From positions 680,939 to 744,938 of the forward strand of contig JAWQFM010000021.1 of NCBI GenBank assembly GCA_033442325.1: 64,000 nt of DNA. The letters are read 5' to 3'. The DNA comes from Salpingoeca rosetta (Eukaryota > Protista > Choanoflagellata). Both the position numbers and the translations under genes were made by a program. A model generated the notes under the pieces. The model had not been told where the DNA came from, made no database searches, and saw nothing but the letters and a program-made list of their open reading frames with translations. Below are positions 15,363 to 47,422 of this stretch, in pieces. Every line of letters starts with the position of its first letter. Within the stretch, counting starts at the first letter, position 1.

Positions 15363-15968
15363 TTAGATCATGGGGATGGTGGTGGGGTTGACCAAGCGCT
15401 TAAAGTCTGCTACGTTGATGGCCAAGGAAAACCGCCGGTCGCCGGCATTGAACACGATGCGGTCCAGCTCCATGAGCTGGGGAGCCACGTACACTTGCAG
15501 TCCAAACAGGTTGCCAAAGGGCGGCACGCCCCCAGGCTGCACGCCGCCCGTGATCTCTGCAACGTCGTCCGCACCGGCAAACCGCACGTCCTTCACGTTG
15601 AGCGCAGACTTGACCTTCTTCGAGTTGAACTTCTCATCCGCAGGGAACACCAGCATCACGTGCTTGGGCTTGTCGGCGTCGGCGGCCTTGCGCTTCAGCG
15701 CCACCACAATCGCCTTTGCTCCTTGTCGGAGCGAGTACCCAGGCCTCGTCGCTGCGGCCTCCTCGCTCGTCCGCACTTCGTCGTGGTGGAATGCTTGGAA
15801 CCAGCACCCGCTGCTCTGTAACAACGCCACAATCTGCCCAACCACAGCGTGGTACCCGCTCACATCCCCCGCATCACCACCTCTGCTGCTGTTGTCGTTG
15901 GTGGGGCTGTCGTTGGTATGGCTGTCGTTGGCATGGCTGTCTGCGACATTTCTCTCCTGCTCCTGCTG

Positions 15969-16014
<46 letters not shown>

Positions 16015-45800: not shown

Positions 45801-47422
45801 GCTTGGTCGGCTCGAGCCTGGTGGCTGATGCCAAGCTGGTTGAGCCGCTGGTGCCGTTTGCGCAGGTGATGCCAGAGGACCCGGCGTACATCCTGTTTAC
45901 CTCGGGCAGCACGGGCACGCCCAAGGGGGTGGTGGTGCAGCATGGTGGCGCGTGCAACACGGTCATCAACACGGCAGACGTGTTTGGCATGTCAGCCCTG
46001 GAGCGTGGGTTCCGCGTGTTTGCCATCACGCAGCTGACGTTTGATCTTGCCATCTTTGACACGTTCTCAGCGCACATGTGCGGTGGTGCCGTGATTGTGC
46101 CAACGGACCGCATCAGCCGGGACCCCGAGGCGTGGGTGGACCTTTGCCACAAGTACCAAGTGACCACGTGGAACAGCGTGCCTGCGTTTGCGCAGATGCT
46201 GTGCGAGTACTGCGAGACGCTTGAGCTGCGTGCGCCGTCCATCCGGCACTTTATGCTCAGCGGCGACTTTGTGCCGCTGCCGCTGCCTGCACAGCTGCGC
46301 CGCGTGACCACGCCGGAGTGCGCTGTGCTCGCGCTTGGTGGGTGCACGGAGACGAGCATCTGGAACAACTTCTTTGACGTGAAGGAGGTGTGTGACGACT
46401 GGCGCACCATTCCCTACGGGTACTCCTTGCCCGGACAGCGGGTGCTTGTGCTGGACGAGAACCTGCAGCCGTGCGCCGTGGGCGAAGAAGGGCAGCTGTA
46501 CATTGCCGGCGACAGCGTGGCCATTGGCTACTACAAGTCGCCAGACCTCACGCGCCGCGCGTTTGTGCCCCTGCCAGGGTGCCTGTTGAACGAGGATGGC
46601 GAACTTGCCAGCACCGCCGGAGAGGGCGCATGGCCGGGCTCGGCTGTGCTTGGACTGAGCGAGTGGGAGAGGGTGCTGCCACGGCGGCTGTACGCGACGG
46701 GTGACCGTGTTGTGCTGCTTTCTGACGGCGCGCTGTCGCTGCTGGGGCGCATCGACTTCCAGGTGAAGATTGGCGGCTTCCGCGTGGAGCTGAATGAGAT
46801 TGACGCGCACCTGTCGCGCTTCCCCGGCATCCACACGTCATGCGTGGTGGTGATCAACAAGCAGCTGGTGGCGTACTTTTGCACCAAGTTGCCCACGACA
46901 GCCACACCAACTGCAACAACTGCAACAGCAGGGGGCGCAGAAGGAAGCGCGCAGACGCCAGCAGAGGGGCGCCCGGAATGGAGCACGGAGGCGTTGGTGG
47001 AGTTCCTGCGCACGAAATTGCCAGACTACATGGTGCCTGAGCGATACATTGAGCTTGAGTCGTTGCCGCTGAACGTGAACGGCAAGATTGACCGCAAGAT
47101 GCTGATGAAGCCCGAGTTTGCGGCTGAGGCGGCGACGGCCGGGCGCGCGCACGAGGTTGGCCCTTCGTCTGGCGTGTCTGATGCTGGGGAGCAGGTGCTT
47201 CGGGTGTGGCAGGACGTGCTTTTGTCTGGACTGCCCATCCCTGATGTGCGCGTTGTGCTGAAGGAGACCATCAAGCAGGCGGGCGGCGATTCGCTGTCGA
47301 CTGTCATGTTTGTGTCGCGGCTGCGCAAGCAAGGCTTTGCCCTCAGCTTGCAAGCGGTTGGTCCAGACACCACGCTGGAACAAGTCATTGCTCTTGTCGA
47401 ACGCAAGCAGAGCAAGGCCTGA
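16905..47422 (+). CDS. Giant intronless modular hybrid PKS-NRPS (about 10,170 aa): MT-GNAT-ACP | KS-DH-ER-KR-ACP | KS-AT-KR-ACP | KS-KR-ACP x3 | C-A-PCP; frame breaks at about 27972, about 35720 and 39725-39950
   Basis: Four abutting or overlapping ORFs (16905-28025, 27931-35766, 35660-39766, 39920-47422) whose junctions all fall in or at the start of KS domains, so the domains run on across the breaks. Catalytic motifs are listed in the domain features. Confidence 0.9.
18885..19620 (+). other. GNAT-like acyl-ACP decarboxylase of the loading module
   Basis: YRVRFAREEDLPGLLHLQEVCW, GAVYSQRI, VQLLGLNVLPEMRHKGYG, GVTRC, DPILRFHVSNGA and NYRPADTENHGHGVLIRYEL. Confidence 0.9.
19965..20200 (+). 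other. Loading ACP
   Basis: FTALGLDSMDLLDL...FQFPTPSALAAHV; phosphopantetheine motif GLDS at 20073-20084. Confidence 0.9.
20496..27330 (+). other. PKS module 1: KS-(decayed AT)-DH-ER-KR-ACP, fully reducing
   Basis: KS HTACSSS / CHGTGT / NTGHAEAAAG; no GHSxG; linker LPLYPFQ; DH HVIMQQELLP and LDAGMQ; ER SLNFRDVL, HAGAGGVG, HVGKIVL; KR GGLGALG, HAAGVTSD, YSS, YAGAN; ACP GLDSV. Confidence 0.85.
27405..31870 (+). other. PKS module 2: KS-AT(malonyl)-KR-ACP
   Basis: KS DTACSSS / EAHGTGT / NIGHLEGAAG; AT GQGSQY, GHSLG (29197-29211), HAFH (29500-29511, malonyl signature); KR GGLGQLG, HCAGVTRD, YAAAN; ACP GFDSI. Confidence 0.9.
31927..35590 (+). other. PKS module 3: KS-KR-ACP, AT-less
   Basis: KS DTACSTS / EAHGTGT / NIGHAEAAAG; short post-KS region with no AT motifs; KR GGAGKLG, CAGSYHV, YASGN; ACP GLESF. 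Confidence 0.88.
35716..39410 (+). other. PKS module 4: KS-KR-ACP, AT-less
   Basis: KS DTACSSS / HGTGT / GH; linker LPAYPFQHQRYW; KR GGSGSLG, HAAGINKD, YSLAN; ACP GVDSL. Confidence 0.88.
39467..43345 (+). other. PKS module 5: KS-KR-ACP, AT-less
   Basis: KS DTACSTS / HGTGT / GH (5' part disrupted by indels); KR GGSGALA, HTAGCTRD, YAVAN; ACP GLDSL. Confidence 0.85.
43915..47400 (+). other. Terminal NRPS module: C-A(Cys-type)-PCP, no TE or R domain
   Basis: C: LSLNQRAMWYLW, YNI, HHISADF (44348-44368), VGHFINTVP. A: YILFTSGSTGTPKG, FDLAIF, WNSVP, SGD, LGGCTETSIW, IPYG, LYATGD, QVKIGGFRVEL, LPDYMVP, NGKIDR. PCP: GGDSL (47282-47296). Stop at 47422. Confidence 0.92.

What the first reader, a model, noticed from the sequence alone, without database searches (positions are those of the whole stretch)
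15363..47422. Undescribed two-gene natural-product system: a 30.5 kb intron-free PKS-NRPS plus a divergent YbaK-like gene in a choanoflagellate-like genome
Seen: the flanking housekeeping genes have microsatellite-filled introns every few hundred bp, yet this locus runs 30.5 kb with no intron and encodes a bacterial-style assembly line (starter module, 5 PKS modules, 1 NRPS module). The adjacent deacylase gene is also intron-free. Known: multimodular PKS-NRPS hybrids are typical of bacteria and some algae or protists, and are rare and little characterised in holozoans. Inference: a horizontally acquired, domesticated pathway that makes an unknown lipopeptide-like metabolite.
Basis: partly seen in the sequence, partly recalled or inferred. 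Interest (0 to 1): 0.95.

Follow-up and report, generated by a model that had tools for sequence, protein, structure and literature searches.

The report
Giant intronless PKS-NRPS gene in choanoflagellate
A single ~30.5 kb intron-free gene of bacterial ancestry, embedded among ordinary intron-rich genes of a choanoflagellate (a close unicellular relative of animals), encodes an apparently intact polyketide/peptide assembly line whose product is unknown. The breaks seen in this assembly are sequencing errors, and the link to the neighbouring YbaK-like gene is unproven.

Summary
The locus is real. Window 16905-47422 (+) encodes an SxtA/AprA-type AR-MT-GNAT-ACP starter, five KS modules and a C-A-PCP module with a cysteine-type pocket and no release domain. 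Microsatellites fill both flanks and are absent from the ORF.

The window does not hold one ORF. Seven single-base indels split it into four. Contigs from four independent public runs contradict six of the seven, so those are assembly errors. The seventh (27987-27990) is one extra base in GGGC. I could not test it with reads.

Bacterial ancestry is supported for the starter by a tree and for one PKS module by best hits. The starter groups with an orthologue in Barroeca monosierra, and the pair nests among bacterial sequences. KS3-KR-ACP best matches bacterial cis-AT PKSs (41-51%). Poly-Q/H tracts and eukaryotic flanks argue against contamination.

The "two-gene system" is not supported. The YbaK-like protein is about 60% identical to a common bacterial family, so it is not divergent. 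Its two closest bacterial homologues that I examined have no PKS nearby.

Choanoflagellate assembly-line PKSs are already catalogued (PMC8256042), but I found none characterised. This is a new member of a known kind. Five earlier scan notes cover sub-features of this same locus; none concerns other DNA.

The parts
15363..16115 (-). YbaK/ProX-superfamily (tRNA_edit) gene, one exon, 250 aa. It has an 84-aa Q/E-rich N-terminal extension and a 165-aa bacterial-type core.
   Evidence: PF04073 at 5e-25. 55-66% identity to about 164-aa bacterial proteins, 80% and 68% to two short environmental contigs. Below the YbaK equivalog cut-off, 57 versus 153 bits. Best PDB match is 3op6, an uncharacterised protein.
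16116..16904 (.). Divergent intergenic region between the two genes. It is eukaryote-like (CA and TTG repeats), with a pyrimidine tract plus CAG just before the synthase ATG.
   Evidence: Sequence read directly. No sigma-70-like promoter.
16905..47422 (+). PKS-NRPS coding sequence. It is 30518 nt in the window and 30513 nt (10170 codons plus stop) after the extra bases are discounted.
16905..20192 (+). Starter module: adaptor region (AprA_N, 16905-17117), poly-Q tract (17775-17882), winged helix (17781-18008), metal-dependent C-methyltransferase (18060-18866), GNAT-fold decarboxylase (about 18882-19634), ACP0 (19980-20192).
   Evidence: PF23526, PF23589 and PF23525 (343 bits), PF00550. PDB: SxtA MT-DC 7uci 7.8e-142, AprA MT1 6b39 2e-107, GphF and CurA GNAT 6e-33 and 5e-28. 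All 64 columns that are at least 93% conserved in 118 homologues are kept.
20496..27317 (+). Module 1: KS1 (20496-21668), about 1200 aa with no profile match (possible AT relic at about 21822-23084, probable DH at about 23112-24104), ER (25281-26198), KR1 (26247-26831), ACP1 (27129-27317).
   Evidence: Pfam. KS Cys/His/His present. DH-type motifs are conserved in the Barroeca orthologue, but there is no significant profile or PDB hit.
27411..31857 (+). Module 2: KS2 (27411-28587), AT2 (28930-29754; GHSLG and HAFH motifs, indicating malonyl), KR2 (30787-31344), ACP2 (31660-31857).
   Evidence: AT2 is the only strong PF00698 match in the whole genome.
27987..27990 (+). Frame break 1, inside KS2: one extra base in GGGC, frame 0 to frame 1. 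The protein reads ...KRG then MLSK... with no residues missing.
   Evidence: Not tested with reads.
31927..35580 (+). Module 3: KS3 (31927-33042), KS-AT linker, no AT, KR3 (34486-34989), ACP3 (35374-35580).
35719..35719 (+). Frame break 2, in the ACP3-KS4 linker: one T too many in a TTTT run.
   Evidence: Absent from the contigs of runs X1, X6 and X3.
35723..39397 (+). Module 4: KS4 (35723-36853), AT-less stretch that ends in a post-AT-linker motif, KR4 (38372-38932), ACP4 (39206-39397).
39467..43315 (+). Module 5: KS5 (39467-40588), AT-less stretch, KR5 (42305-42838), ACP5 (43154-43315).
39758..39950 (+). Frame breaks 3-7, inside KS5: four extra bases (39758, 39855, 39921, 39950) and one missing G after 39806. 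Nine substitutions lie in 39728-40003.
   Evidence: All four runs carry the in-frame version, which equals the KS3 paralogue here. No contig carries the window's version.
43916..47395 (+). NRPS module: C (43916-45208; HHISAD motif), A (45437 to about 47119; pocket DLFNMSLIWK), PCP (47231-47395). The stop codon is at 47420-47422. There is no TE or R domain.
   Evidence: Nothing coding for a release domain lies downstream.

Best explanation
The locus is one intron-free gene of about 30.5 kb. It lies in the nuclear genome of a choanoflagellate; the genome size of 55.4 Mb and a Barroeca monosierra orthologue fit Salpingoeca rosetta, but the species is not proven. The gene encodes a 10170-residue hybrid PKS-NRPS and descends from a bacterial assembly line acquired before the S. 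rosetta/Barroeca split. The frame shifts in this assembly are sequencing or consensus errors at and near internal repeats, not introns or decay.

Inferred mechanism (collinear reading, none of it shown):
- The single intact acyltransferase (module 2, malonyl-type), or another cellular transacylase, loads malonyl on the carrier domains.
- The starter methyltransferase C-methylates malonyl-ACP0 once or twice, and the GNAT domain decarboxylates it to a propionyl or isobutyryl starter.
- Module 1 extends the chain and probably reduces it fully (KR, probable DH, ER).
- Modules 2-5 each add a malonyl unit reduced only to the beta-hydroxyl.
- The C domain couples the resulting 3,5,7,9-tetrahydroxy C13/C14 acyl chain to cysteine held on the PCP.
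- Release needs a factor encoded elsewhere.

The YbaK-like neighbour is a separately recognisable gene of bacterial type with no demonstrated role in the pathway.
For: Architecture.

Catalytic motifs are intact. KS Cys-His-His is present in all five KS domains. AT2 has GHSLG and HAFH. All five KRs have the Ser/Tyr/Asn region. ER has HAGAGGVG. The carrier serines are present. The C domain has HHxxxD. The A domain has core motifs and a pocket matching PchE at 9 of 10 positions. The starter keeps 64 of 64 conserved columns.

The frame shifts are assembly errors. Contigs of four runs from four studies give the in-frame sequence at six of seven breaks. One X3 contig runs unbroken from unique sequence at 36950 to 40033, and no contig shows the window's variant. 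Codon arithmetic then closes exactly if the seventh break is one extra base.

The gene is a eukaryotic resident. It has a RIC1 flank and microsatellite-rich flanks, and poly-Q/H tracts sit even inside KS1 and KS2. The stretch laid (window 35200-40400) is held by runs of 8 studies. There is an orthologue in Barroeca.

Bacterial ancestry. The best non-choanoflagellate starter hits are bacterial: Nostoc, Myxococcaceae, Anaerolineae. In the tree, the choanoflagellate pair (support 1.0) nests among Gammaproteobacteria, Legionellaceae, Klebsiella and Flavobacterium sequences. The nearest relative lies in an operon-like array. KS3-KR-ACP best matches bacterial cis-AT PKSs.
Against: - The break at 27987-27990 is untested.
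- The run data are assembled contigs, which can drop variants.
- Expression is not shown. Run X19 may be RNA, but that is only a guess by the tool.
- The DH and the AT relics rest on motifs only. Profile and PDB searches found nothing, and the AF2 model was unusable.
- The extent of methylation, collinearity and non-iterative use are assumptions.
- There is no release domain, so the real product may be longer or different, for example if the chain is handed to the second PKS on contig C5.
- The midpoint-rooted FastTree has weak support at some nodes (0.002-0.92), and most tips are unnamed.
Confidence: 0.75

Rival explanations
1. The YbaK-like gene and the synthase form a functional two-gene unit. 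The deacylase would release or proofread cysteine or acyl-cysteine on the terminal PCP, or protect the cell's tRNA pool.
For: The two genes are head-to-head, 789 bp apart, and both are intron-free and of bacterial type. The assembly line lacks a release domain. Its A domain has a cysteine pocket. From my own knowledge, canonical YbaK acts on Cys-tRNA(Pro).
Against: Adjacency is the only link. The protein is not a YbaK equivalog. The two closest bacterial homologues I examined have no PKS or NRPS nearby. The marine 80% orthologue has a different ORF directly upstream. The family acts on tRNA esters, not carrier-protein thioesters. A PF00975 thioesterase gene exists elsewhere in the genome.
Confidence: 0.12
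2. The gene is a decaying pseudogene and the frame shifts in the window are real.
For: The window carries seven frame-breaking indels and two in-frame TGA codons in KS5. One break is untested.
Against: Four independent runs give the intact frame at six breaks, and none gives the window's version. The longest stretches, 3706 and 2611 codons, are stop-free. The catalytic motifs checked and 64 of 64 conserved starter columns are kept. The errors cluster at repeats shared by KS3, KS4 and KS5.
Confidence: 0.06
3. The gene was inherited vertically from an ancient eukaryotic modular PKS rather than acquired from bacteria.
For: Modular PKSs occur in several protist groups (PMC10394414). Most tips of my tree are unnamed, so hidden eukaryotic relatives are possible.
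Against: The only close eukaryotic relative found is Barroeca. Every named next-best hit is bacterial. The gene has no introns in a genome where the flanking genes are dense with them.
Confidence: 0.08
4. The locus is bacterial contamination or a chimeric misassembly.
For: Bacterial-type domains. GC content is higher than in the flanks, 0.61-0.66 against 0.48-0.58. Choanoflagellate cultures contain bacteria.
Against: The locus lies on the same scaffold as RIC1 and microsatellite-rich DNA. It has an eukaryote-type intergenic region. CAG/CAA-encoded poly-Q tracts lie inside catalytic domains. An orthologue exists in a second choanoflagellate. The laid 5.2-kb stretch is present in runs of eight studies.
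Confidence: 0.02

Closest known systems
GNAT-type PKS loading modules with a metal-dependent C-methyltransferase (SxtA, AprA, GphF; CurA without the MT)
   Same: Same domain order: adaptor, MT, GNAT, ACP. Strong matches to PF23526, PF23589 and PF23525 and to the solved SxtA MT-DC, AprA MT1, and GphF and CurA GNAT structures. All family-conserved columns are kept.
   Different: It is encoded in a eukaryote as the N-terminus of a 10170-residue polypeptide. It is interrupted by poly-Q tracts. It is followed by a KS (as in AprA and GphF) rather than the aminotransferase-like domain of SxtA. Whether it methylates once or twice is unknown.
Bacterial cis-AT modular PKS-NRPS hybrids (curacin, apratoxin and epothilone type)
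   Same: KS domains are 41-51% identical to actinobacterial and myxobacterial cis-AT PKSs. The KS-AT linker (PF16197) and post-AT-linker motifs are retained. It has a C-A-PCP module with a Cys-type pocket.
   Different: Only one of five modules keeps an intact AT. There is no thioesterase or reductase. A Cys-type A domain is paired with an ordinary HHxxxD condensation domain instead of a cyclisation domain. All modules lie in one polypeptide.
Choanoflagellate assembly-line PKSs listed in the Stanford PKS catalogues (Nivina et al., PMC8256042; PMC10394414)
   Same: Those papers report assembly-line PKSs with gene-conversion repeats in choanoflagellates. This locus has near-identical KS3, KS4 and KS5 segments, 94-97% over 0.8-1.2 kb.
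   Different: The papers give no accession, architecture or product in the text held here, so I could not confirm that it is the same gene.
Nematode PKS-1/NRPS-1 hybrid assembly line
   Same: It is a PKS-NRPS hybrid encoded by a holozoan nucleus, cited as the first deorphanised animal case in PMC10394414.
   Different: I did not test sequence relationship. The nematode genes contain introns and are split over two proteins (my own knowledge). The starter chemistry differs.
Free-standing YbaK/ProXp trans-editing deacylases
   Same: A single tRNA_edit domain of about 165 aa, 55-66% identical to a widespread bacterial subfamily.
   Different: Below the Cys-tRNA(Pro) deacylase equivalog cut-offs. 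It carries a Q/E-rich eukaryotic N-terminal extension and a 3-residue insertion shared only with two environmental orthologues. Its substrate is unknown.

Membership tests
Type I modular PKS | KS active-site Cys plus two His in each module | tested here: met
   TACSSS or TACSTS, HGTGT and N(I/T)GH motifs are present in KS1-KS5. Pfam KS N- and C-terminal domain hits.
Type I modular PKS | A carrier domain with the phosphopantetheine serine after each module | tested here: met
   PF00550 hits for six ACPs and one PCP. (D/E)S motifs are present; ACP3 has GLES.
cis-AT PKS | An intact acyltransferase in every extending module | tested here: not met
   Only module 2 has PF00698 with GHSLG and HAFH. 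Modules 1 and 3-5 have no AT hit. The proposed relics are not statistically supported.
trans-AT PKS | No integrated AT, a free-standing AT gene, and KS domains of the trans-AT clades | tested here: not met
   An integrated AT is present in module 2. The genome has no other strong AT. The KS best hits are cis-AT PKSs, and KS-AT linkers are retained.
GNAT-type loading module (SxtA/AprA/GphF) | Adaptor region, metal-dependent MT, GNAT decarboxylase and ACP in that order, with family-conserved residues | tested here: met
   Catalysis itself is not testable here.
NRPS module | C domain HHxxxD, A-domain core motifs, and PCP serine | tested here: met
   HHISAD. A3 motif TSGSTGTPKG. Lys in NGKIDR. GGDSL in the PCP.
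Cysteine-activating A domains | Specificity pocket of the DLYNLSLIWK or DLFNLSLIWK type | tested here: met
   The pocket was read from alignment to PchE, FmoA3 and BmdB as DLFNMSLIWK, 9 of 10 positions identical to PchE. Substrate was not assayed.
Heterocyclising (Cy) NRPS modules | DxxxxD motif in place of HHxxxDG | tested here: not met
   The C domain has HHISAD.
YbaK (Cys-tRNA(Pro) deacylase) equivalog | Score above the curated cut-off of TIGR00011 or NF007951 | tested here: not met
   57.2 bits against a cut-off of 153, and 26.8 against 243. The Pfam superfamily domain PF04073 is met.
Animal FAS-like PKS | Single iterative module related to animal FAS | tested here: not met
   Five KS modules. 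The 120 listed best hits for KS3-KR-ACP are bacterial modular PKSs wherever a source names the organism.

The most novel reading that the evidence does not exclude
The TE-less assembly line is unloaded or proofread by the neighbouring tRNA-editing-fold protein. A YbaK-superfamily deacylase would then have been recruited to hydrolyse or cyclise cysteinyl or acyl-cysteinyl thioesters on a carrier protein. The resulting polyhydroxy-acyl-cysteine would be a choanoflagellate-made signal or defence molecule. That would be a new function for the editing fold and, as far as the papers I searched go, the first natural product pathway characterised in the sister group of animals.
Probability: 0.08. Interest if true: 0.85.

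Novelty: new member of a known kind. Interest (0 to 1): 0.55.

Why it matters
[quoted passage not shown] I found no paper describing any secondary metabolite made by a choanoflagellate. This is an apparently intact 10170-residue PKS-NRPS with an SxtA/AprA-type starter, shared with Barroeca. That makes it a concrete, testable candidate for such a metabolite. It is also an example of a bacterial megasynthase kept for a long time in a holozoan nucleus.

The locus also shows an assembly line in which four of five acyltransferases have been lost while one remains. That pattern bears on how AT-less PKSs arise.

There is a practical warning as well. This assembly carries clustered indel errors at repeats, and these can look like frame shifts, micro-exons or pseudogenes.

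Tried and rejected
- Introns at the ORF junctions. Rejected: the protein alignment is continuous across each junction, with no spare DNA.
- Real frame shifts. Rejected for six of seven sites by read-derived contigs.
- The search for related loci on bacterial genomes with the MT-GNAT region. This was wasted: the tool picked poly-Q peptides as patterns and returned one irrelevant Streptomyces ACP.
- Identifying the 1200-aa stretch between KS1 and ER. Pfam found nothing, PDB phmmer found nothing, and phmmer against 120 bacterial PKSs found nothing significant. BLASTP against AT2 gave E = 8.8. The AlphaFold2 model built from a two-sequence alignment had mean pLDDT 36.5, so I ran no fold search.
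- PDB search of the KS3-KR interdomain stretch: nothing.
- Looking for tailoring or release genes in the flanks. 20 flanking ORFs were scanned, 15 of them downstream. The only convincing hits are the two RIC1 domains; one weak sub-threshold Metallophos_2 hit is the only other. This is a weak test in an intron-rich region.
- Synteny of the YbaK orthologue on the marine scaffold. The scaffold is too short to decide: only 301 bp lie upstream.
- Supplementary tables of the two PKS-catalogue papers: not held.
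Full report
WHAT IS IN THE SEQUENCE

The + strand between 16905 and 47422 is open almost throughout, but as four ORFs rather than one: 16905-28025, 27931-35766, 35660-39766 and 39920-47422. Pfam scans of these pieces and of overlapping 800-aa chunks give the following order of domains:
- Starter: AprA_N adaptor, winged helix, AprA-type methyltransferase (343 bits), a GNAT-fold stretch and ACP0.
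- Module 1: KS1, about 1200 aa with no hit, ER, KR, ACP.
- Module 2: KS2, AT, KR, ACP.
- Modules 3, 4 and 5: KS, KR, ACP each.
- NRPS module: C, A, PCP, then the stop codon.

The gene on the other strand at 15363-16115 is an unbroken 250-aa ORF with a tRNA_edit domain.

THE FLANKS

The upstream neighbour is a multi-exon RIC1 gene. Tandem Repeats Finder lists TG/CA-type microsatellites every few hundred bases in 1-15357 and 49652-64000. It lists none with score 80 or more between 17890 and 49652, and the only arrays inside the two genes are CAG/CAA codon repeats. GT-rich sequence resumes immediately after the stop codon.

The window is G000:C21:680939-744938 of a 55.45 Mb assembly in 68 pieces and contains a 100-N gap. 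The size, and the orthologue described below, fit Salpingoeca rosetta. I did not prove the species.

THE FRAME BREAKS

The ORF junctions fall inside KS2, in the ACP3-KS4 linker and inside KS5.

Three-frame translation and tblastn with a paralogous KS show that the protein continues without loss across each junction, so there is no room for introns.

At KS5, a DNA alignment with the near-identical KS3 shows five single-base indels within 200 bp.

I laid contigs of four public runs from four studies on 35200-40400 (5201 letters, within the operators' limit). All runs that cover the sites:
- lack the bases at 35719, 39758, 39855, 39921 and 39950;
- have an extra G after 39806;
- differ at nine nearby substitutions.

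No contig carries the window's version. In run X3, one contig runs from unique sequence at 36950 through to 40033. If KS5 really differed from KS3 here, the assembly graphs would branch at 39728, and they do not.

These six breaks are therefore errors of this assembly, clustered where KS3, KS4 and KS5 share 94-97% identical DNA.

The seventh break is one extra base in GGGC at 27987-27990. The protein reads KRG and then, one base later, MLSK, which is the canonical KS sequence. I had no read call left for it. Discounting the net five extra bases gives 30513 nt, which is exactly 10171 codons. That is what a single ORF requires.

I therefore read the gene as one intron-free ORF of 10170 codons, with that one site unverified.

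IS THE ENZYME INTACT?

- All five KS domains keep the Cys and both His.
- AT2 has GHSLG and HAFH, the malonyl signature.
- All five KR domains keep the Ser/Tyr/Asn region, and ER keeps its nucleotide motif.
- All carrier domains keep the serine.
- The C domain has HHISAD.
- The A-domain core aligns best with the cysteine-activating domains of PchE, FmoA3 and BmdB. Its pocket reads DLFNMSLIWK, 9 of 10 positions identical to PchE.
- In an alignment of the MT-GNAT region with 118 homologues, all 64 columns that are at least 93% conserved are kept.
- The best solved relatives of the starter are the SxtA MT-decarboxylase didomain (7.8e-142), AprA MT1, and the GphF and CurA GNAT domains.

The stretch between KS1 and ER has no profile or PDB match, and its AlphaFold2 model was unusable. 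It does carry the three hallmark dehydratase motifs (H-x8-PGA, YxGP-x-F, DxxxQ), and these are invariant between this gene and its Barroeca orthologue. I call it a probable, divergent DH.

Modules 3-5 keep the KS-AT linker (PF16197) and post-AT-linker motifs such as LPAYPFQHQRYW, but they have no AT. A proposed AT relic in module 1 is not statistically supported.

PF00698 finds no other strong AT in the whole genome. No TE or R domain follows the PCP, and nothing downstream encodes one.

WHERE IT COMES FROM

An exhaustive HMMER search with the starter found 526 cluster representatives at E ≤ 1e-30. The best is a 2865-aa protein of Barroeca monosierra (EukProt): 1090 bits, 44% identity over 2160 aa, running from the starter through KS1 and well into the uncharacterised stretch that follows it. 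The next hits, at about 520 bits and 45-48% identity, are bacterial (an unclassified MAG, Nostoc, Anaerolineae, Myxococcaceae). B. monosierra is described as closely related to S. rosetta (PMC11389367).

In a FastTree of 119 MT-GNAT sequences, the two choanoflagellate proteins are sisters (support 1.0). They sit inside a group whose named members are Gammaproteobacteria, Legionellaceae, Klebsiella, Kluyvera and Flavobacterium. The nearest tip lies in a tightly packed operon-like array.

The KS3-KR-ACP module best matches bacterial cis-AT modular PKSs at 41-51% identity, not animal FAS-like enzymes.

Against contamination:
- poly-Q/H tracts lie in linkers and even inside KS1 and KS2;
- the intergenic region is eukaryotic in character;
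- the flanks are eukaryotic;
- runs of eight studies hold the stretch laid, window 35200-40400.

Together this supports an old bacterial acquisition, before the S. rosetta/Barroeca split, followed by domestication. The tree is midpoint-rooted, some nodes are weak, and most tips are unnamed, so donor and direction are not settled.

THE YBAK-LIKE GENE

Its 165-aa core is 55-66% identical to hundreds of about 164-aa bacterial proteins. It is 80% and 68% identical to two proteins on short environmental contigs, which share a 3-residue insertion with it. An 84-aa Q/E-rich extension precedes the core.

It scores far below the Cys-tRNA(Pro) deacylase equivalog cut-offs. Its best solved relative is an uncharacterised protein, 3op6. 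The language-model atlas places it with bacterial YbaK/ProX-associated clusters. It is the only free-standing member of this kind in the genome.

The two closest bacterial homologues I examined lie beside ABC-transporter and PfkB genes, with no PKS or NRPS nearby. On the marine scaffold with the 80% orthologue, a different ORF starts 95 bp upstream; the scaffold is too short to be decisive.

So the gene is of bacterial type and conserved, but nothing beyond adjacency ties it to the synthase. The idea that it unloads or proofreads cysteine on the PCP is attractive given the Cys pocket and the missing TE. It remains speculation.

MOST LIKELY MECHANISM (inferred)

- Malonyl units are loaded by AT2, acting on all carriers, or by another transacylase.
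- The MT methylates malonyl-ACP0 and the GNAT domain decarboxylates it, giving a propionyl or isobutyryl starter. The chemistry of the family comes from my own knowledge of SxtA, AprA and GphF.
- Module 1 extends and probably fully reduces the chain.
- Modules 2-5 each leave a beta-hydroxyl.
- The C domain acylates PCP-bound cysteine.

The predicted tethered product is a 3,5,7,9-tetrahydroxy C13 or C14 acyl-cysteine.

Candidates for release or further extension:
- a free-standing PF00975 thioesterase ORF on contig C9;
- a second AT-less, TE-less four-KS PKS in a 6015-codon open frame on contig C5;
- less likely, the YbaK-like neighbour.

One PPTase gene is present.

WHAT IS KNOWN

Nivina et al. 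mention assembly-line PKSs with gene-conversion repeats in choanoflagellates (PMC8256042; PMC10394414). So the existence of such genes is public knowledge. The papers' text gives no accession, and their supplements are not held. Searches for S. rosetta or choanoflagellates together with polyketide or PKS-NRPS found no description of this gene, its starter or its product.

VERDICT

The locus is a new, uncharacterised member of a known kind of enzyme in an unusual and experimentally tractable host.

Five earlier first-stage notes of this scan describe sub-features of this same locus (starter, Cys code, YbaK, missing release domain, KS repeats). My tests agree with their observations. None concerns other DNA.

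Noticed in passing
window 35719-35789 and 39728-40003: This assembly has clusters of consensus errors (indels plus substitutions) at and near internal repeats. All four public runs disagree with it. Other 'frame shifts', 'one-nucleotide exons' or pseudogenes noted in this genome may have the same cause.
   Followed up: partly
window 31914-33168, 36152-36979, 39458-40658: KS3, KS4 and KS5 share DNA that is 94-97% identical over 0.8-1.2 kb. KS5 resembles KS3 in its 5' part and KS4 most closely in its 3' part, as expected from gene conversion between modules.
   Followed up: partly
G000:C5:2049160-2067204 (-) (loci L009-L011): A second intron-free multimodular PKS sits in a 6015-codon open frame. 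It has about 860 aa with no hit, then KS, ACP-KS-DH-KR-ACP-KS-KR-ACP-KS, then about 1070 aa with no hit. No AT and no TE were detected.
   Followed up: partly
G000:C9:334077-335591 (+) (L008:4077-5591): A free-standing 504-aa ORF with a PKS/NRPS-type thioesterase domain (PF00975, 62 bits). It is a candidate trans-acting release enzyme.
   Followed up: partly
G000:C21:709868-710692 (window 28930-29754): AT2 of this synthase is the only strong acyltransferase (PF00698) match in the whole 55 Mb genome. Two weak matches lie on contig C4.
   Followed up: no
window 17775-17882, 19134-19166, 19638-19670, 20250-20267, 20637-20678, 20910-20960, 28147-28188, 43805-43822, and 15957-16081: Poly-Q/H tracts encoded by CAG/CAA repeats are inserted in linkers and inside the KS1 and KS2 domains. 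A Q/E-rich extension sits on the YbaK-like protein. The aligned bacterial YbaK homologues lack the extension. The Barroeca synthase orthologue lacks the tracts at most aligned sites, though it has a shorter one in KS1.
   Followed up: partly
window 16545-16904: A CA repeat is followed by a pyrimidine tract and CAG directly before the synthase start codon. This may be a 5'-UTR intron, which would make the gene intron-free only in its coding part.
   Followed up: no
window 7124-7223: A 100-N scaffold gap lies inside the RIC1 gene region.
   Followed up: no
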